Assembly: GCF_006345805.1 (NCBI RefSeq)
Contig: NW_021827664.1
Span: forward strand, 1-9,989
Source: Octopus sinensis
Lineage: Eukaryota
DNA: 9,989 nucleotides
Direction of reading: 5' to 3'
Below the pieces are notes generated by a model. That model made no database searches. It worked only from the letters and a program-made list of their open reading frames with translations, and was not told the DNA's origin. Made by a program: the position numbers and the translations under genes. Below, one piece after another: positions 1 through 9,614 of this stretch (position 1 is the first letter of the stretch; each line of letters starts with the position of its first letter).

Positions 1-530
1 CAGAAGATATGAACGAAACAATCCAAGAAGAATAATTGAATTGAAATATAATGAAGAATATATTCACAGATTTCAACAGGATGGTATCTCTAAATTTTTG
101 GCAATCAAAAATCAACAAATGAAATTTCCAATTTATGGAAGGAATGAGTAATGTACTATTGACATTCCCTACCACTTATTTAGTTGAAAGTGGATTTAGT
201 TTTGTCAATCATAATACACAATGTGAAAGAAATAGACTGGAAGTGTGTTTAGAGGCGATATACGCCTAAAGTTGAACAGAATTAAACCCGACATAGAATA
301 TTTAGCGAGTAAACATCAATATCAAGGGTCTCACTAATAATTTTTATAAAAATTCAATTTTTACATTGATTTATTATTTTATATTTTGATTTTTGATACA
401 AAAAACAACCAATTAAGGGACAATGCCCAAAAATTTTTAAATTGTATGTGGACAAGGGGGCGATAAAATTTCAAAGGGGGCGATAAAATATCTAAGGGGG
501 CGATGAACAAAAAAAGGTTGAGAATGCCTG
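1..530 (+). mobile_element. 3' remnant of a hAT (Buster/ZBED5-SCAND3-like) DNA transposon: decayed transposase C-terminus plus right terminal inverted repeat
   Basis: 153-337 reads VLLTFPTTYLVESGFSFVNH..RNRLEV / RGDIRLKLNRIKPDIEYLASKHQYQGSH* with a frameshift near 248. This is the hAT dimerization region with the catalytic E and the ..SH* ending typical of Buster. The element ends AAAAAGGTTGAGAATGCCTG at 530, followed by CTCTAGGC (8-bp nnnTAnnn, the Buster target-site pattern). The 5' part lies outside the window. Confidence 0.88.
454..504 (+). repeat. hAT subterminal repeats, 3 x AAGGGGGCGAT with 20-bp period
   Basis: Exact copies at 454-464, 474-484 and 494-504, just inside the right TIR. 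Probable transposase-binding sites (inference). Confidence 0.85.
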
Positions 531-973
531 CTCTAGGCCATGCAATGAAAAAAAACCAGTTTATTTATTTAAAATATATTTAGATTTAATTACATTATTT
601 TGTTAAATATCCATTTAAATCTAACTAAACGTTTTAATTCACTTTTTTACACATCAAATTTGACGTTTTTCTAAATATGAAGCAAAAACAATTATATTTA
701 TTTGAAATTCATGAATATAATTAGCACGAAATGGGTTCCAAAGAATGCAAGATTTTATTGTGTAGCATGATGAACTAAATCGAAAGTGTTATCATTGTAA
801 AAATATATTGAATTGAAAAAATGATAGGTGTGCCATGACTTATTTGCCCACTGAAACATAAAACTGGATATGTGAATTAATGATAGAATAAATTAAATCT
901 ATTACTCATAATTAACTATTTTATGAATTAATTATTTGCATTATCTCACCGCCATATCTTTGCCCCGATAATT

Positions 974-1026
974 ATTATTTTTTATTTCGTAATTCTCTTG
1001 TGCAACTAAGTTGCGCAATAATCCCG
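974..1026. repeat. 53-bp direct repeat, copy 1, containing a 21-nt near-palindrome
   Basis: ATTATTTTTTATTTCGTAATTCTCTTGTGCAACTAAGTTGCGCAATAATCCCG is identical to 1846-1898. The internal stem is TTGTGCAAC-TAA-GTTGCGCAA. Confidence 0.95.
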
Positions 1027-1069
1027 TTTATTTGTATATAAAATATCAAAAAGGCGGCGTTAATTTGTT

Positions 1070-1935: not shown

Positions 1936-2295
1936 CTAATTAATGGCCTCACGAGACACCCGGCCAGCCTCGCGAATGGCGAAGCTGTTCCCTCGGATCA
2001 CAGCAATCGACAGACGTTCCAGGAGCCAAGAAAACTCTCTTGGATCGTGACTAGTCCTTGAAATCCGTCGGCCGAGTGAGCGAAGGAGCGGAGTGTCTTG
2101 GAGCCGAAGATCCCGAGGACTCCACGGCGATTGGAGTAAAGAACACCGAATTGGAGAGGTGGCCGTACTTGAGAATCTTTCGGTCCTCGGCCTGCCTCGA
2201 AGCGTGCCCATGATTGGCGCGGACAGAGCGAGATTTCCCAGCGAGAACGTGTCCGAACAGGTAAATCCCAAATAAGGGATTTCCCCTGGTTGCCT
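1936..2295 (-). mobile_element. 3' fragment of a CRE-like (restriction-like endonuclease) non-LTR retrotransposon, frameshifted
   Basis: Joined across frameshifts, the minus strand reads GKSLIWD/FTCSDTF..ASRQAEDRKILKY..FFTPIAVESSG..LGRRIS..DPREFSWLLERLSIAVIRGNSFAI. This is the WD-TC, AE-xxK-xxKY, P-A-E-S-G and RLSIAxxRGN motif series of the RLE C-terminus, and it is homologous to the ORF at 5458-6150. Confidence 0.85.
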
Positions 2296-2304
2296 TGACA
2301 AGAC

Positions 2305-2630
2305 TTTCGAACTTCGTAGAGGAATCAGCTGCACTTGCAGTAGGCAGTAGGGAAAACGCTGACCCGAACTATTTTCAATGTTTTCTCTTGCATATTCTAC
2401 GCTGGGCAGCCTGCTTTTTGGGTAAAATCATCAGGTCAATGTGGGATCCCACAGGGTAACCCCTTCTTATTTGCTGTTTGTGTCGACCATCTGGCATTTT
2501 TTCGCCAATTAATTTTTGTATTTGACGAGATCACTTTTGGAGAGTCGTTAAAAGCATAATGAAGGATTCTTCAAGGATAATATTTGAACTTCTAAAATTG
2601 GACTTTTACTAAATGGCGCGAAATTTGAGT
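2305..2630 (+). mobile_element. Decayed reverse-transcriptase core fragment of a CRE-like non-LTR element, opposite in orientation to the adjacent RLE fragment
   Basis: The plus strand, across several frameshifts, gives PELFSMFSLAYST..SLLFG (from 2363), GIPQGNP-FLFAVCVDHLA (2443; cf. GVQQGDPLGPLLF), FDEITFG (2521; cf. YLDDxT) and IGLLLNGAKFE (2597-2629; cf. IGLxLNxxKCE). The motif order is that of non-LTR RTs. Boundaries are approximate. Confidence 0.7.
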
Positions 2631-2996
2631 ACATTCAGAGCGTTGTACATTTGTTTGGTGATTTCAAGTGAGGTCATGATGACAGAACTTCCCGTATCCG
2701 CAACTGTAGCAACGTTATAGAAGGTGAACCTTCCAAGAGATAATCTTAACCCATTAAGTTAATGATATGCCTTGGCATATTGAATTGCCAATAATATTTC
2801 TTAGTTATTGGAATATATGTTATATTTCCTACAAGAAATTGGGATCGGTAAATCCGAGTGTGAGCTCTCCTCCAGTTTTATTCTTCGAATTACTGACAAT
2901 TGAAATATTGTGTGTGACCAGTTTTAAATAAAAGGCGAATATCCCCGATCAATTAGTCCCTGAGATAGCATCTGTTGCAATGGAGGAACGACATTG
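2625..2996 (-). pseudogene. Inverted partial duplicate of the aspartic protease gene, including two introns and the second DTG
   Basis: The reverse complement matches 6589-6959. I count 3 substitutions and 3 single-base indels over about 372 bp (about 98% identity). Confidence 0.95.
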
Positions 2997-3085
2997 CTGA
3001 TTTTAGCTGATTTTAGTTCGAATTTGGCCTGATTTTAGTTCGGGACATATTAATAATAAAAATCAGGTCTTTGCTGAAATAACAA
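2997..3085 (+). repeat. Stuttered junction plus a direct-orientation copy of a second protease-gene segment
   Basis: CTGATTTTAG occurs at 2997-3006, 3007-3016 and 3029-3038. 3021-3085 matches 6453-6516 (intron 3' half plus exon start) with about 4 differences. Confidence 0.92.
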
Positions 3086-4824
3086 TTTGCCATAAAATTT
3101 TGCGAACAATTCACTGAAACCTTCTCAACTTAGGCGCCACAAAGAGTCTGTACACCCAAAAATTCTTCCTCACATGAATATTTTAAAGTCAAAAGAACGA
3201 AGTTTGATTCACAGCAAAGCTGAATGTGTTTAATAAATCTCAAGATAAACCGAGATTAGAAGCATCATATGCTGTAATTTTAATTTGTATATCTACAAAT
3301 AGGTCTCAATGATTATCGCAAAAAACAAAGCTGCACATAATTCTGGTGAAAAGCTAATCAACCAGCGGCTCTGAAATGGCTCGAATTTTGTTTGGTCCGG
3401 ATGCAGTTACCAAACTTAAGGACATACCATTATCCAACGATTCAATTTCCCGTAGAATTTCAGAATTCATTCGATATCCTGAAGCAATTAATTGAAAGAA
3501 TCAATAAAAGTAAATGCGGAATAAGTATTCAATTGGACGATCAACTGACATTTCTAACGACTGTCAGCTTGTGTTTTATGTTCGCTTTGTTGATGATGAG
3601 AATATTATTGATGAGTTTTTATTTTGTTTGGAGATGGATGACACACTCGTGAGAGGACATCTTTAATATTTTTGACAATTTTATGAAGACGAATAAATCC
3701 AATGGGATAAAGTTGGATCTATATGTACTGATGGTGCATCTGCGATGATTGGTCATCAATCTGGACTTGTTACTCGTATTAAGGATTTGGTTCCTGATAT
3801 TGTTACAAGACATTGTGCATTGCACAAATATGCACTTTGTTCAAAAACTATGTGTTCGTCGTTAAGAGAAACACTAAACACTATTGTAAAAGTGATAAAC
3901 TATATTCGATCTCGACCACTTAATCATCGAATTTTCCAAACTCTTTGTGAAGAGTTAGGAAGTGATCATTCTATACTACTTCATCATTCTGAAATTAGGT
4001 GGCTTTCAAGGGGGAATCCTTTCGAGAATTTGTGAACTTTCCCCTGCGATCTCTTGTTTTTTGCGTGATAATATGCAGCATGATTGGGCCGATCAATTTG
4101 ATGATTTTACTTTTAAATCGAAAATGTATTATCTTGCCGATTTTTTTTAACATTTTAAATGAGTTTAATTTGTCATTGCAGGTTAATTTTTATTAATTTA
4201 TTTAAAGATCTTTATATATCAATTGTCGAGTCAATCAAATAATAATGGCTTTTAAAAAAAAGTTATTTTGTGGATAATGAAAATAAAAAAAGGAATAACA
4301 TGAATGTTCCCAATCCTTGAATATCTCTCGGACACAACCCACCGGATAATGTTCTTCTAAGTCTGATAATCAAACATCTGGAAAATCTCAAGACAAAATT
4401 TGATGATTATTTTCCTGTTGAAGACCCAATTCCAAACTGGATCGTTCAACCTTTCTGACCTCATTTAGAGAATATCAGGAACTCAATTTTCAGCAGAGCT
4501 TGATTGAACTTCAATGTAATCAGTCTGCTCAGATTATTTTCAAATGTACTTCATATTAGATTTTTGGTATTCTCATTAATAATTCTTTTTATTGTTAGGT
4601 GTCAGATGGCGAAAGAATTCCCCATTTTGAGTAAAACTGCATTGGAATCAATACTTGCATTCCCCACTACTTATCACTGTGAAATGGCGATGTCGTGCCT
4701 GACTTTTCTAAAAAAACAAATATAAAATAGACTACGGGTACAAGATGATATGCGAGTAGCTTTGTCGAACATAGAGCCTGTAAGTAAAATTATTCTGAGC
4801 AAACAAGATCAGAAATCTCACTAA
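3086..4824 (+). pseudogene. hAT transposase (ZBED5/SCAND3/Buster-like), multiply frameshifted, with putative micro-introns
   Basis: Motifs appear in order: LEASYA|VSMIIAK, IPLSNDSISRRI, SIQLD.STDISNDCQL (first D), ICTDGASAMIG (second D), HCALHKYAL (CxxH), HSEIRWLSRG, YYLADFF, DFW|CQMAKEFPIL, AFPTTYHCE (E), KQDQKSH* (stop 4822-4824). Confidence 0.92.
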
Positions 4825-5020
4825 ATTACTATTAAATTTCTGTTATTTTCATAATGTTCATGTTATTTTTATAATAAATATCGAACATGTCTAAACCTGG
4901 CCCTGACGAGGCCAAAAATTGTGCGCTAATACCAAAAATGTTTATTTTATTTAAGGTGGTCCCCACAAAATTTTATAGTGCAAAAGTGGTCCCCAGTCTA
5001 AAAAAAGTTGAGAACCGCTG
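3086..5020 (+). mobile_element. 5'-truncated Buster-type hAT transposon with intact right end
   Basis: It begins mid-BED finger (CHKI.ANNSLKPSQLRRHKESVHP). It ends with GTGGTCCCC subterminal motifs at 4956 and 4986 and AAAAAAGTTGAGAACCGCTG at 5020, followed by TTGTAAAC (nnnTAnnn). No left TIR is visible. Confidence 0.92.
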
Positions 5021-5318
5021 TTGTAAACCATTACAAAAAGTCCTTTAAATTCACGAATTTTTATTCAATAAAATCATGAATATTTTCTTGGGAAAATAAA
5101 CGTATATTCATCAATGTTATCAAATATTGGGCTCCCGCACTTGCGTGGGTCTAGAGTCCAACATCTGGAAAAGCTGAGAAAAATTTTGAGGATTGCTAGA
5201 ATCACTTAATTAATTACCCTAATTAACTGTTGGTGATTCTTGGGTTAAAATAATAATAATAATGCTATTTTATTTTACGCAATTTTTTTCGAATTAAAAA
5301 GGGAGTTATAACTGTTGA

Positions 5319-6130
5319 TTTTTTTTTTAGCTTAATTTTATTCAAATTAAAAGAGAAATAGTCATTGGCAGATAGCCAGAGTATTGCCTCTGACTATGGC
5401 TATAGATATTCTTTCGATTATACCGGTGCTCACACGGGTCGCCGGTAACCCTTTCGATTATTGAGGCAATACGCTGGAGTAGGGTCCGAGTAGAAGGCCC
5501 CTGTATTCCTGACGTCTCAACAGCCAGGGGGACAACAACACTCTCCCGTTCCCAATTCCAGCGTATTTCTCAGCTTTTCTTTTCTCAGCCCGTTCAGACG
5601 GGGCTCCAGGATTCTCGATGCATAATTTGATGTTCTGTTTAGAAAAGGAGTTCACACACGTGACGTCCCAAACCAGACACTTTCCCCTCTGGAATGGAAA
5701 TGTGGTCATCCCATCGGGTCTTCTGCCGTCCTCTACGAAAATCCCTGCAGGTTCCAATTGTGTGTGGAATCCAGCAGTTCGAAGAGATCGACAGATGATC
5801 TGGTTCAGTTCGGAATGCCGTGAGGAACGTCCAATTCCGTTTCGACAGGAGAGGGAGTGATATCCAAACTCGTCAGTCCACACGCCGCACCGGCATTGGT
5901 GTTTTTCATAAACGCGTAGACCGAGGCGCAGACAAACTCCAATTCTTACGGCTTCATCATTAAGAAGGCAGCCAGTTGTATTACAAGGGTAACAGTTTAG
6001 CCACGCGCCGCTTAGGGGCTGGCTGCCCGCTTGTAAACAAGCCAACCTTCTCTGGTCCATGGTTTCCTTTAGGCATGAAAAAGTATTGGCGTGAACTTTC
6101 ACAGTCCACTCCGATTGGCAGGTCACATCA
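5319..6130 (-). mobile_element. 5'-truncated CRE-like non-LTR retrotransposon (zinc knuckle plus RLE domain) with poly(A) tail
   Basis: ORF 5458-6150 shows SGAWLN..P, RIGVCLRLG, the CCHC knuckle CRCG(x7)HSLSC, RH..LN, RRPDG and GKCLVWDVTCV. After frameshifts it continues PLAVETSG and RISIAIVRGN, with stop at 5342-5344. The stop overlaps AATAAA (5337-5342) and is followed by A10 (5319-5328) on the minus strand. The 5' boundary is approximate. Confidence 0.92.
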
Positions 6131-6138
6131 GATGGCAA

Positions 6139-7267
6139 TTGAAACTTCACAATTACAAGAACGTGATTCGCTAAATAAAGAGACTTCTAGGCTCAATATT
6201 ATGGTGAAATCGGGTTAGGGACTCCATAACAAAAATTTAACGTCATTTTCGACACAGGCTCTGCAAATCTTTGGGTTTATAGTTCAAAAAAATTGTTACC
6301 AGGTGTATAATCCACCTTATTTTTATTAGGACATCGTAAATATAATCATAAAAGTCATCAACATACAAGGCCAATGGGACAAAGTTCGAAATTTCATATC
6401 CTTCGGGCAATGTCAGTGGCTTCCTTAGTCAAGATCATCTTTCGGTATCGCCAATTTGGCCTGATTTTAGTTCGGACATATTAAAATAAAAAATCAGGTC
6501 TTTGGTGAAATAACAAATGCAAAAAATCAACTTTACTTTGCAAAGTTTGATGGAATACTTGGAATGGGATTTCTGCTTTAGCAAAAAACAATGTCGTTCC
6601 TCCATTGCAACAGATGCTATCTCAGGGACTAATTGATCGGTAATATTCGCCTTTTATTTAAACTGGTCACACACAATATTTCAATTGTCAGTAATTCGAA
6701 GAATAAAACTGGAGGAGAGCTCACACTCGGATTTACCGATCCCATTTCTATGTAGGAAATATAACATATATTCCAATAACTAAGAAATATTATTGGCAAT
6801 TCAATATGCCAAGGCATATCATTAACTTAATGGTTTAAGATTATCTCTTGGAAGGTTCACCTTCTATAACGTTGCTACAGTTGCGGATACGGGAAGTTCT
6901 GTCATCATGACCTCACTTGAAATCACCAAACAAATGTACAACGCTCTGAATGTACTCAACTTTTATTTTGTATTTTTATTGATAATGGAATAGCCTATTG
7001 TCATTTGTGACAAATCTAGTAAATATCCTTCTCTAATCTTTTTTATGGGTGGGAGGGAATTTGAGTTAAGGCCGGAGCATTACATGAAACATGTAATTGA
7101 CACGAATAATACCATAGCTTGCTTTGAATCTGTGCTATGTGGGAATACAGGCAATGAATATCCTGCCATTTAACAGTTTAATATTGGGTGATACATTTTT
7201 GAGTCGTTTCTATTCCGTCTACGATTTTGAAAATGGCCAAATTGGCTTTGCTGATGCTAGAAATTAA
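6139..7267 (+). pseudogene. Cathepsin D/pepsin-family (A1) aspartic protease, 5'-truncated, 7 micro-introns, 1 premature stop and 4 single-base deletions
   Basis: The spliced product reads [34 protein letters not shown] (DTG 6251-6259)..FAKFDGILGMGF..GGELTLG..YWQF..VADTGSS (DTG 6886-6894)..LILGDTFLSRFYSVYDFENGQIGFA. Introns are at 6163-6190, 6303-6329, 6445-6470, 6666-6691, 6814-6839 (GC-AG), 6970-6993 and 7093-7117. Lesions are TAA 6227-6229 and -1 deletions near 6350, 6570, 6641 and 6744. No signal peptide or propeptide is seen; the CRE-like element lies directly upstream. Confidence 0.93.
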
Positions 7268-7339: not shown

Positions 7340-7680
7340 AATTTATTTATTGATGATAAAAAAACCATTTCCTGTATTGAGGAGTTTTCTCGTCACAAGC
7401 CGGAGGATTCGGATTAGCTCCCCAGAACTGTTTATGGCAAAATCGAGTTATCTTATTGGACTGTCCTTTTCTGTTTACAAACAAGGATAGTTTCTTAAAT
7501 AATGTGCATATTATGGGCCTTTGGAGGTTTGCTATATATACCTGTGTTGTTCACAAGGGAATGGCTAGTAGTTCAATGCTGTCTTAAATGTAGATCTCTG
7601 TGACATTACAAATCTCCTGGATTTAGACTGCCGAAGTTTCTAAAAGCGGTTTCTCGGAGATTTTTTGCTAGAAAAATTGA
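7340..7680 (-). pseudogene. Possible decayed micro-intron gene fragment, product unknown
   Basis: Candidate GT-AG segments lie at 7583-7609 (27 nt) and 7519-7541 (23 nt). An open frame reads ..RPIICTLFKKLSLFVNRKGQSNKITRFCHKQFWGANPNPPACDEKTPQYRKWFF. Indels are needed to join the pieces and I recognise no family. Confidence 0.25.
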
Positions 7681-7699
7681 TATTTTAATTGGTTAGCTT

Positions 7700-7787
7700 T
7701 TTTATAAAATTGTTTTGTTACATGTGGCCCCCAGAAGAATTCAACTAATTAAAGTGGTCTACGGTCAAAAAGGGTTAAGAAACAGTG
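7700..7787 (+). mobile_element. Isolated, diverged right end of a third Buster-type hAT element
   Basis: GTGG-CCC-type motifs lie at 7724 and 7754, with the same 30-bp spacing as in the 5020 end. They are followed by AAAAAGGGTTAAGAAACAGTG ending at 7787 and then TGCTAGGA (nnnTAnnn). The left boundary is uncertain. Confidence 0.7.
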
Positions 7788-7833
7788 TGCTAGGATATCA
7801 TTAAATGCTATAATGACTAATATTATTTTAATA

Positions 7834-9064: not shown

Positions 9065-9583
9065 ATGTTGCGTGTGCCTGAGGTTATGTTGTCGTGAAAT
9101 AGTCTCAGTTACCAATATACGGGCAGTCCCCCGACAAGTCCGGCTACGTGCCACCACAGGAATCAGTCGAACGCATAATTCACTCGATTCGACTCAAGTT
9201 GGAGCCCTCCTTCGACAAGGCAGGCAATTGGAATGGTCATTATTAGTTATACAACCAAGTCGGACAGGCAATAGAATACTCGATGGGTACTCCCATATGC
9301 TCATTCCCAGATAACGTGGAATATATCCGAAACCACCCATCTCTCATCCCTAAATTGTCAGTGATCTCTGCCTTTGGAGTGTCTGGCTTCCTTATGTCTT
9401 TGCGACGTTGACTGTTGTTGGTAGTTCCAGTGGGAGGGCGAGTGAGACGCGTCGTCTACTCCGGATTGGGACTCATCACAGGCGTCAGTGTCTGCTACCC
9501 TCAGACCGCCATCGCCCACTCCAAGACAATGGTCGACTTGTTAATATCGGTATATACTCAGTGCACTATTCTAGAAAATGTGA
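9065..9583 (+). CDS. APOO: MICOS complex subunit MIC26/MIC27 (apolipoprotein O-like), 132 aa, 5 micro-introns
   Basis: Removing introns 9083-9102 (20 nt), 9220-9246 (27, GC-AG), 9287-9310 (24), 9407-9430 (24) and 9550-9574 (25) gives a 399-nt frame: MLRVPESQLPIYG..EYIRNHPSLIPKLSVISAFGVSGFLMSLRLGGRVRRVVYSGLGLITGVSVCYPQTAIAHSK..KM*. The LPIY motif, two glycine-rich hydrophobic segments split by a basic linker, and the CYPQ motif match ApoO/ApoOL. MIC26 and MIC27 cannot be distinguished here. Confidence 0.85.
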
Positions 9584-9614
9584 CTAATTCAATAATTGTT
9601 GTTATTTATTAGTT

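What the first reader, a model, noticed from the sequence alone, without database searches (positions are those of the whole stretch)
3274..4598. A Buster-type hAT transposase that appears to carry host-style micro-introns
Removing 3274-3302 (29 nt, GTAATT..AAATAG) gives LEASYA|VSMIIAKNK, the conserved LEASYxVSxxIAK motif. Removing 4567-4598 (32 nt, GTATTC..TGTTAG) recreates the split Trp codon in DFW|CQMAKEFP, matching the FW..EYP motif. A third AT-rich 26-nt GT-AG segment follows NLSLQ at 4182-4207, but it needs one extra indel. Buster/Charlie/SPIN transposases are generally single-exon, and the other hAT here (1-337) shows no comparable insertion at its FW region. The element still has a right TIR and a TA-centred flank. 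This suggests intron gain inside a mobile gene, with introns sized to the host splicing machinery, or a long-resident intron-bearing lineage.
Basis: partly seen in the sequence, partly recalled or inferred. Interest (0 to 1): 0.75.

Follow-up and report, generated by a model that had tools for sequence, protein, structure and literature searches.

The report
Jumping gene with three tiny introns
A cut-and-paste transposon (Buster-type hAT), in what looks like the genome of a dicyemid (a tiny parasite of octopus kidneys), carries three introns of only 27-33 bases, the size typical of its host, and its transposase gene reads through only if they are removed; its closest relatives in other animals have no introns at these sites.

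Summary

- **This copy.** Window 3086-5020 is a 5'-truncated, indel-laden copy of a Buster-type hAT transposon.
- **Other copies.** I found four further independent insertions of the same family (97.6-99% identical) on contigs of an assembly labelled Octopus sinensis. Two complete copies have 8-bp duplications of the nnnTAnnn type.
- **The segments are a family feature.** All copies carry the three segments. In the consensus they are 30 nt (phase 0), 27 nt (phase 1) and 33 nt (phase 2). All are GTA..AG and 82-93% A+T, against 66% in the exons.
- **The gene needs them removed.** The consensus gives an uninterrupted 590-residue transposase only after all three are removed. Unspliced, it stops after 103 residues.
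- **Removal restores normal spacing.** The spliced protein has the exact spacing seen in 82-83 of 84 homologues at sites 1 and 2, and in 53 of 84 at site 3.
- **Relatives lack them.** Five relatives from other animals and two other hAT families in the same genome have no intron at these sites.
- **The host fits.** Neighbouring host genes have 26-28-nt introns and no cephalopod orthologues, so the host looks dicyemid (published median intron 27 nt).
- **What is open.** Splicing is inferred, not shown, because no RNA data were available. Whether the introns arose tiny or shrank later is unresolved.

The parts
3086..5020 (+). 5'-truncated copy of a 2347-bp Buster-type hAT transposon. The left TIR, the ATG and about the first 30 codons are missing.
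   Evidence: blastn gives 96% identity (gaps counted) to L003-L007 from window 3085 to 5020/5028. Alignment to the family protein shows 18 frameshifts.
3086..3273 (+). Remnant of exon 1: BED-type zinc-finger region (..CHKIL.NNSLKPSQLRRHKESVHP..) ending in LEASYA.
   Evidence: weak zf-BED Pfam match on the consensus protein.
3274..3302 (+). Intron 1, phase 0. 29 nt here and 30 nt in the consensus (GTAATTTTAATTTATATCTAAAACAAATAG). It has two in-frame stops if retained.
3303..4182 (+). Exon 2: catalytic core (QLDESTD, CTDGA, RWLSRG motifs) up to NLSLQ plus the first base of the Gly codon.
   Evidence: The longest intact stretch, 3697-4032, is 95% identical to P0226.
4183..4207 (+). Remnant of intron 2, phase 1. 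25 nt here and 27 nt in the consensus (GTAAAATTTTTATTAATTTATTTAAAG). In this copy the donor is mutated GT>TT and two A's are deleted.
   Evidence: Homologue spacing at this site is 14 residues in 82 of 84, equal to the spliced form.
4208..4566 (+). Exon 3, ending in ..LDF plus TG of the Trp codon.
4567..4598 (+). Intron 3, phase 2, splitting the Trp codon. 32 nt here and 33 nt in the consensus (GTATTCTCATTAATAATTACTTTTTATTGTTAG). It has an in-frame stop if retained.
4599..4824 (+). Exon 4: C-terminal hAT dimerisation region (FPTTYHCE..RNRL..) through the TAA stop.
   Evidence: sub-threshold Dimer_Tnp_hAT match.
4825..5020 (+). 3' untranslated and subterminal region with GTGGTCCCC repeats; the right TIR is at 5005-5020.
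5021..5028 (.). Flanking octamer TTGTAAAC (nnnTAnnn). It is the surviving half of the target-site duplication.
   Evidence: The complete copies L003 and L004 have perfect 8-bp duplications, GGCTATAC and TTCTAAAT.
6145..7258 (+). Context: a host cathepsin-D-like gene, frameshifted here, whose introns give the host's intron style (6163-6190 at 28 nt, 6445-6470 at 26 nt, 6666-6691 at 26 nt).
1..530 (+). Context: 3' end of a second, different Buster-type hAT (coding tail 11-334, TIR ending at 530, flank CTCTAGGC). It has no intron at the FW site.

Best explanation
Window 3086-5020 is a dead or error-laden, 5'-truncated copy of a recently active Buster-type hAT DNA transposon. The host is most likely a dicyemid, a parasite of octopus kidneys.

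**The intact element** is 2347 bp. It has TIRs of about 15 bp (CAGCGGTTCTCAACC), subterminal GTGGTCCCC repeats and 8-bp nnnTAnnn target duplications.

**Its transposase gene** has four exons separated by three ultra-short GT-AG introns of 30, 27 and 33 nt.

**Inferred mechanism.** The host spliceosome, which routinely removes introns of about 27 nt, splices the pre-mRNA. Only then is a 590-residue transposase made, with a BED finger, a DDE/RW catalytic core and a hAT dimerisation domain. That protein cuts and pastes the element. Without splicing, translation stops after 103 residues.

**Origin.** The introns are extra sequence inserted into an otherwise colinear gene. They are absent from all relatives examined, so they were most likely gained in this transposon lineage.

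**Shown:** the family-wide presence of the segments, their GT-AG ends, an open frame only after their removal, their absence in relatives, and the host's intron size.

**Inferred:** that they are actually spliced, and when and how they arose.
For: **Other copies.**
- A closely related protein, P0226, is 95% identical over 93 residues. It led to five loci holding the same element at 97.6-99% identity.
- L003 and L006 are the same locus, so there are four independent insertions plus the window, each with different flanks.
- Perfect 8-bp duplications occur in L003 and L004.

**The segments behave as introns.**
- All three are present in every copy.
- The consensus aligns to the Buster profile with no frameshifts and no stops once the 30-, 27- and 33-nt GT-AG segments are removed.
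- The spliced gene has 590 codons and no stops, against 37 and 67 stops in the other two frames. The unspliced reading frame is 103 residues.
- The introns are 82-93% A+T, against 66% for the coding sequence.
- The spliced spacing equals that of 83/84, 82/84 and 53/84 homologues at the three sites. The alignment with the intronless Palaemon protein has no gaps at the junctions.
- GT-AG is the joint best of 256 boundary pairs.

**Relatives lack them.**
- The coding sequence is continuous across all three sites in five relatives.
- Two other hAT families in the same genome have no insertion at the sites they cover.

**Host.**
- Introns of 26-28 nt occur in the adjacent cathepsin-D-like gene and in an SK-channel gene.
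- The SK-channel protein has no cephalopod orthologue; the next hit is 42% identical.
- Published dicyemid introns have a median of 27 nt and a GTa 5' signal. D. japonicum lives in O. sinensis (PMC6543705, PMC13644364, PMC6736024).

**Buster identity.** The best hits are FAM200-, ZBED5-, ZBED8- and SCAND3-like proteins. ZBED5 and ZBED7-9 are Buster-derived (PMC3606216).
Against: - No transcript or junction-read evidence was available, so splicing is inferred from reading-frame logic.
- Intron 2 is 27 nt with no in-frame stop, so on sequence alone it could instead be a 9-residue coding insertion.
- None of the six sequenced copies is fully intact. L004 has no frameshift, but the acceptor of its intron 1 is mutated AG>AT. 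An active master copy has therefore not been seen.
- The consensus rests on only five independent copies.
- The host is assigned from micro-introns and missing cephalopod orthologues, not from a named dicyemid sequence. The related contigs are labelled Octopus sinensis.
- The relatives examined are only 34-45% identical, so closer intron-bearing sister lineages could exist unseen.
Confidence: 0.85

Rival explanations
1. The introns are old. The lineage acquired ordinary-sized introns long ago, either in dicyemid ancestors or before arrival. They then shrank together with all host introns, so nothing was born at 27-33 nt.
For: Dicyemid introns are described as shortened versions of conserved ancestral introns (Ogino et al. 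2010, as cited in PMC6543705). The relatives I could examine are only 34-45% identical, which leaves a long unsampled branch.
Against: No relative examined has any intron at these sites. Two other hAT families in the same genome lack them. A transposon would have had to stay continuously active in one lineage throughout the whole period of shrinkage.
Confidence: 0.3
2. The segments are not spliced. The family is non-autonomous, with a reading frame disrupted by three insertions, and another element's transposase moves it.
For: No RNA evidence exists. No fully intact copy is among the six sequenced. Other Buster-type hATs with similar ends occur in the same genome.
Against: - It needs three independent insertions that all start GTA and end AG.
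- All three must sit exactly where removal restores frame and canonical spacing.
- All three must be very A+T-rich and of host intron size.
- The other 590 codons of the consensus carry no lesion, while the alternative frames carry 37 and 67 stops.
Confidence: 0.05
3. The segments are copy-specific junk acquired during the decay of this one dead copy.
For: The window copy is heavily damaged: 18 frameshifts and a truncated 5' end.
Against: All four other independent insertions carry the same three segments at the same positions.
Confidence: 0.01
4. The element belongs to the octopus genome, or was exchanged between octopus and parasite, so the segments are not matched to the host that expresses it.
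For: All related copies come from an assembly labelled Octopus sinensis, and RefSeq names them as octopus proteins.
Against: - Genes on these contigs and in the window have 26-28-nt introns.
- The SK-channel protein has no close cephalopod orthologue.
- The window's cathepsin D is only 42% identical to a cuttlefish CTSD.
- The five RefSeq proteins sit on contigs of 21-522 kb.
Confidence: 0.05

Closest known systems
Buster family of hAT transposons (TcBuster, AeBuster; domesticated ZBED5/Buster1, ZBED7-9, FAM200, SCAND3)
   Same: - Best protein matches are FAM200C-, ZBED5-, ZBED8- and SCAND3-like (E down to 1e-134).
- 8-bp target duplications with a central TA.
- Short CAG.. TIRs.
- BED finger, DDE/RW core and a C-terminal dimerisation region, colinear with the Palaemon protein.
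   Different: All relatives examined have no intron at any of the three sites, and four of the five are single-exon outright. This family has three introns of 27-33 nt. Identity to the nearest relative is only 45%.
hAT elements known to have introns: BuT2 of Drosophila buzzatii (five exons; PMC3942097). From my own knowledge, also maize Ac and medaka Tol2.
   Same: The hAT transposase gene is interrupted by spliceosomal introns of the size typical for the host. BuT2's predicted exon coordinates imply introns of 60, 154, 58 and 58 nt, close to the Drosophila minimal class.
   Different: BuT2 belongs to the Tip group and Ac/Tol2 to the Ac group, not to Buster. Their introns are at least twice as long. 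None is from a host with introns under 30 nt.
Paramecium Tc1/mariner elements Sardine, Thon and Anchois (PMC3464196, supporting-information legends)
   Same: These are transposons in a host with tiny introns (Paramecium introns average about 25 nt, from my own knowledge). Their reading frames were annotated with predicted introns, including a potential intron in a DDE transposase gene.
   Different: They belong to a different superfamily and live in a ciliate host. The introns were only predicted, and no comparison with intronless relatives was made.
Ultra-short host introns of Dicyema and myxobolid Myxozoa (PMC13644364, PMC6543705)
   Same: Length 27-33 nt against a dicyemid median of 27. The 5' end is reduced to GTA. 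A-runs lie upstream of the AG in two of the three.
   Different: These sit in a mobile element, not in a conserved host gene, and have no counterpart in homologues. All three are followed by exon GT, unlike the four host introns seen here.

Membership tests
hAT superfamily | 8-bp target-site duplication | tested here: met
   L003 has GGCTATAC on both sides and L004 has TTCTAAAT on both sides. The window copy has only its right flank.
hAT superfamily | Short terminal inverted repeats | tested here: met
   CAGCGGTTCTCAACC at both ends of L003, L004 and L006. Only the right TIR is present in the window, at 5005-5020.
hAT superfamily | Transposase with a DDE catalytic core, an RW motif and a C-terminal hAT dimerisation domain | tested here: met
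   Colinear alignment with Buster homologues keeps QLDESTD, CTDGA, RWLSRG and the C-terminal CE. Pfam Dimer_Tnp_hAT scores 19.0 bits, below the 21.4 cut-off. Precomputed PF27073, PF14291 and PF27046 are on record for the family's RefSeq proteins. Catalytic activity was not tested.
Buster family of hAT | Target-site consensus nnnTAnnn. The contrast with nTnnnnAn for Ac is from my own knowledge of Arensburger et al. 2011; PMC3606216 says only that the families differ in target-site choice. | tested here: met
   All five independent flanks have a central TA: TTGTAAAC, GGCTATAC, TTCTAAAT, CTATACAC, AGCTAAAC.
Buster family of hAT | Groups with Buster sequences rather than with Ac or Tip | tested here: inconclusive
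   The best hits are all FAM200/ZBED5/ZBED8/SCAND3-like, and ZBED5 and ZBED7-9 are Buster-derived (PMC3606216). No formal tree with TcBuster, Ac and Tip references was built.
Spliceosomal (U2-type GT-AG) introns | GT..AG boundaries whose removal restores the reading frame and the homologous protein | tested here: met
Spliceosomal (U2-type GT-AG) introns | Present at the same position in independent copies of the gene | tested here: met
   Five independent insertions. Single copies carry splice-site mutations: L004 at the intron 1 acceptor and the window at the intron 2 donor.
Spliceosomal (U2-type GT-AG) introns | Removed from the mature transcript | not testable with these tools
   No RNA data were reachable. 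No spliced product was found in the protein collections. A junction pattern found nothing in metagenome contigs.
Introner-like or transposon-generated introns | The introns are copies of one another or of a dispersed repeat | tested here: not met
   The three introns share only low-complexity A+T similarity. Genome-wide copies could not be searched.
Introns made by tandem duplication of exon sequence | Intron sequence resembles the adjacent exon | tested here: not met
   Local alignment scores to the flanking exons fall within the range of shuffled introns (fraction reaching the observed score 0.2-1.0).

The most novel reading that the evidence does not exclude
The three introns were born at their present ultra-short size inside a dicyemid, after an intronless Buster element arrived. 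That would make them the first clear cases of new introns arising at under 35 nt in an animal, where tiny introns are otherwise explained by shrinkage of ancient ones. As a side effect, the element could make transposase only in hosts able to splice such introns. That would confine it to the parasite and block its spread to the octopus it lives in.
Probability: 0.35. Interest if true: 0.7.

Novelty: new variant of a known kind. Interest (0 to 1): 0.55.

Why it matters
**What is and is not new.** Introns in transposase genes are not new. Examples are BuT2 (PMC3942097) and, from my own knowledge, Ac, Tol2 and the P element. Here the gene has close intronless relatives and sits in one of only two animal lineages known to have introns under 30 nt (PMC13644364).

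**A clean case of intron gain.** These three are extra sequence in an otherwise colinear gene, so they show intron gain rather than conserved, shortened introns. They give a small, well-defined substrate for two questions: how such tiny introns arise, and what minimal signals the dicyemid spliceosome needs.

**Practical consequences.**
- Standard annotation missed the introns. The RefSeq models start at the first Met after intron 1.
- Parasite contigs appear to be annotated as octopus genes.

Tried and rejected
**Searches that found nothing close**
- The first protein search, with a frameshift-corrected translation, found nothing closer than 45% identity. An exhaustive search with the one intact 112-residue stretch was needed to find the family.
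- An exact look-up of a window ORF in public assemblies found nothing.
- Metagenome contigs gave no relatives by peptide patterns and no match to a pattern spanning junction 1, spliced or unspliced.
- The spliced protein matched no solved structure at E <= 0.001.
- The local Pfam copy gives only sub-threshold matches to it.

**Ideas tested and rejected**
- Myxobolid Myxozoa as host. They also have introns under 30 nt (PMC13644364). I dropped this once the sister copies turned up in an octopus assembly on contigs with spiralian-like genes.
- Origin by tandem duplication of exon sequence: no significant similarity between introns and flanking exons.
- An introner-like origin: the introns do not resemble each other.

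**Checks that were uninformative or unresolved**
- Whether the window's many frameshifts are sequencing errors. Deletions outnumber insertions 28 to 2 and are only mildly enriched in homopolymers (68% observed against 54% expected). This is unresolved.
- The flanks of the related loci are mostly transposons and yielded few extra host genes.
- The RefSeq gene models are chimeric with a neighbouring hAT and say nothing about splicing.

Full report
**What is at the coordinates**

The window is A+T-rich eukaryotic DNA. The plus strand from about 3086 to 4824 reads as a Buster-type hAT transposase, but only by hopping between frames.

I wrote a protein-to-DNA aligner that allows frameshifts and GT-AG introns. 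I ran it against single homologues and against a profile of 43 homologues. It also finds some 16-18 small frameshifts and a few stops.

In a control using all 256 donor/acceptor dinucleotide pairs, GT-AG tied for the top score. The only equal was the same deletion shifted by one base.

The right TIR (5005-5020) and the TA-centred flank TTGTAAAC are present. The copy starts abruptly at 3085/3086, where it abuts a duplicated piece of a neighbouring gene.

**Finding the family**

A word-indexed search with the corrected translation found nothing closer than 45% identity: FAM200C-like from the shrimp Palaemon, then ZBED5-, SCAND3- and ZBED8-like proteins. These are all Buster-derived names (PMC3606216).

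An exhaustive search with the only long intact stretch (3697-4032) found P0226, 95% identical. Its cluster has five RefSeq proteins named 'ZBED8-like [Octopus sinensis]'. The DNA around all five could be fetched.

Each locus holds the same element. The window copy is 97.6-97.9% identical to them, and they are about 99% identical to each other. L003 and L006 are the same locus, so there are four further independent insertions, each with different flanks. L003 and L004 are complete, at 2346 and 2358 bp. Both have CAGCGGTTCTCAACC at each end and perfect 8-bp duplications, GGCTATAC and TTCTAAAT.

**The decisive result**

All copies carry all three segments. In the consensus they are:

| Intron | Length | Phase | Sequence | If retained |
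|---|---|---|---|---|
| 1 | 30 nt | 0 | GTAATTTTAATTTATATCTAAAACAAATAG | two in-frame stops |
| 2 | 27 nt | 1 | GTAAAATTTTTATTAATTTATTTAAAG | no stop; adds 9 residues |
| 3 | 33 nt | 2 | GTATTCTCATTAATAATTACTTTTTATTGTTAG | one in-frame stop |

- With the three removed, the consensus aligns to the Buster profile with no frameshift and no stop.
- It then encodes 590 residues from an ATG at element position 286. The other two frames hold 37 and 67 stops.
- Left unspliced, the frame closes after 103 residues.
- The introns are 82-93% A+T, against 66% for the coding sequence.
- The spliced protein has exactly the spacing of 83/84, 82/84 and 53/84 homologues at the three sites.
- It aligns with the intronless Palaemon protein without gaps at the junctions.

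The consensus shows why it seemed to need an extra indel. In the window the donor G is mutated, two A's are lost, and the true remnant is 4183-4207.

**Relatives**

- The Palaemon, Sipha and Onthophagus genes span exactly three times their protein length plus a stop codon, so they are single-exon.
- An unnamed ENA contig has four 1-nt frameshifts and no intron.
- The Oratosquilla model is one exon through residue 497, past all three sites.
- Two other hAT families in the same genome also lack them. The tail at window 11-334 has no insertion at the FW site. A deleted copy at L003 8215-9234 has none at sites 2 and 3.

The introns are thus specific to this family, as far as sampling allows.

**Host**

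- The neighbouring cathepsin-D-like gene has introns of 28, 26 and 26 nt. It is at most 44% identical to any known protein and 42% identical to a cuttlefish CTSD.
- On L006, an SK-channel gene has a 26-nt intron. Its RefSeq protein has no cephalopod orthologue; the next hit is 42% identical, and the named hits that follow are mostly annelids and molluscs.
- Introns under 30 nt are known in animals only from myxobolid Myxozoa and Dicyema (PMC13644364).
- Dicyema introns have a median of 27 nt (PMC6543705).
- D. japonicum lives in O. sinensis, and its genome is 36.7% G+C with 49% repeats (PMC6736024).

I conclude that the window and the 'octopus' contigs are dicyemid DNA. The intron sizes, the GTA starts and the A-runs upstream of the AG in introns 1 and 2 fit that host.

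**Mechanism and origin**

*Inferred.* The element is an ordinary cut-and-paste hAT, but production of its transposase depends on host splicing of three micro-introns.

*Shown.* The introns are pure insertions relative to homologues.

*Unknown.* How they arose. They resemble neither each other nor the flanking exons, so the introner and tandem-duplication models gain no support.

Two oddities are unexplained. All three are followed by exon GT, and all three lengths are multiples of three.

Whether they were born tiny or shrank with the host's introns cannot be decided from five copies and distant relatives.

**Caveats**

- There is no RNA evidence.
- No fully intact copy was found. L004 comes closest, but the acceptor of its intron 1 is AG>AT.
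- The window copy has 28 deleted against 2 inserted bases, alongside about 44 substitutions, relative to the consensus. This may be partly assembly error, so 'dead copy' is likely but not certain.
- Buster membership rests on homology and target-site pattern, not on a tree.

**Comparison and verdict**

hAT transposases with host-sized introns are known, for example BuT2 with five exons (PMC3942097). Paramecium transposons were annotated with predicted introns (PMC3464196).

What is new here is a Buster-family element whose three introns are clearly lineage-specific and of extreme brevity, in a host lineage famous for such introns. I rate it a new variant of a known kind, of moderate interest. 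It would rise if RNA data confirm splicing and population data show recent birth of the introns.

Noticed in passing
L003-L007 (contigs VCDQ01013302, 9711, 5863, 0240 and 9435 of GCA_006345805.1): Contigs of the Octopus sinensis assembly look like dicyemid parasite DNA. They hold a 26-nt intron, and the SK-channel protein P0375 has no cephalopod orthologue. They nonetheless carry RefSeq 'Octopus sinensis' proteins: XP_029654905.1, XP_029656764.1, XP_029654959.1, XP_029656197.1 and XP_029653726.1. The hAT models start at MIIAKNK because the 30-nt intron was not recognised.
   Followed up: partly
window 2621-3085 versus 6447-6963: Pieces of the cathepsin-D-like gene are duplicated next to the truncated 5' end of the hAT. 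2621-2996 is an inverted 97% copy of 6589-6963, and 3015-3085 is a direct copy of 6447-6516. The hAT and a retroelement fragment lie between the inverted arms. This could be a transposon-associated rearrangement.
   Followed up: partly
window 6145-7258 (+): The cathepsin-D-like aspartic protease gene (Pfam Asp, E 1.6e-29) has introns of 28, 26 and 26 nt. It also has about seven frameshifts and in-frame stops, most of them shared with its 97% duplicate. It is either a pseudogene or sits in an error-rich assembly region.
   Followed up: partly
window 1-538 and about 7587-7795: Two further Buster-type 3' ends lie in the same orientation, with ..GTTGAGAA.. TIRs and TA-centred flanks (CTCTAGGC, TGCTAGGA). 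The first has a decayed coding tail. The second has no coding sequence and may be a miniature derivative.
   Followed up: partly
window 5458-6150 (-) and 1936-2430 (-): G+C-rich (about 50%) reading frames with no Pfam match. The first has a CCHC..RPDG..WDVT pattern. A similar domain (..RPDG..WDAT) lies on a contig with a reverse-transcriptase-like reading frame in L005, so these are probably retrotransposon fragments. Window 5357-5535 is 95% identical to L004 3810-3990.
   Followed up: partly
window 3086-5020 versus the family consensus: The window copy has 28 deleted bases but only 2 inserted, alongside about 44 substitutions. The deletions are only mildly enriched in homopolymers. This is an unusual indel-to-substitution ratio, and may reflect long-read assembly error or a strong deletion bias.
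   Followed up: partly
family consensus (window equivalents 3303, 4208, 4599): All three introns start GTA. All three lengths are multiples of three (30, 27, 33). Each is followed by an exon that begins GT (GTCTCA, GTCTTT, GTGTCA). None of the four host introns seen here is followed by GT.
   Followed up: partly
L003 5388-5650, L004 5368-5650 (left end of the full element): The first ~127 bp of the element, including a second TIR-like motif (AGCGGTTCTCAATCGTGGTCCCC), is tandemly duplicated at the left end.
   Followed up: no
window 970-1029 and 1842-1901: A 60-nt direct repeat (97% identical) lies 872 bp apart and contains the near-palindrome TTGTGCAACTAAGTTGCGCAA. It may mark the ends of another element.
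   Followed up: no
window 9412-9609 (+): A weak ApoO/MICOS-like match (E 0.013, below the cut-off) suggests a host gene at the right end of the window.
   Followed up: no
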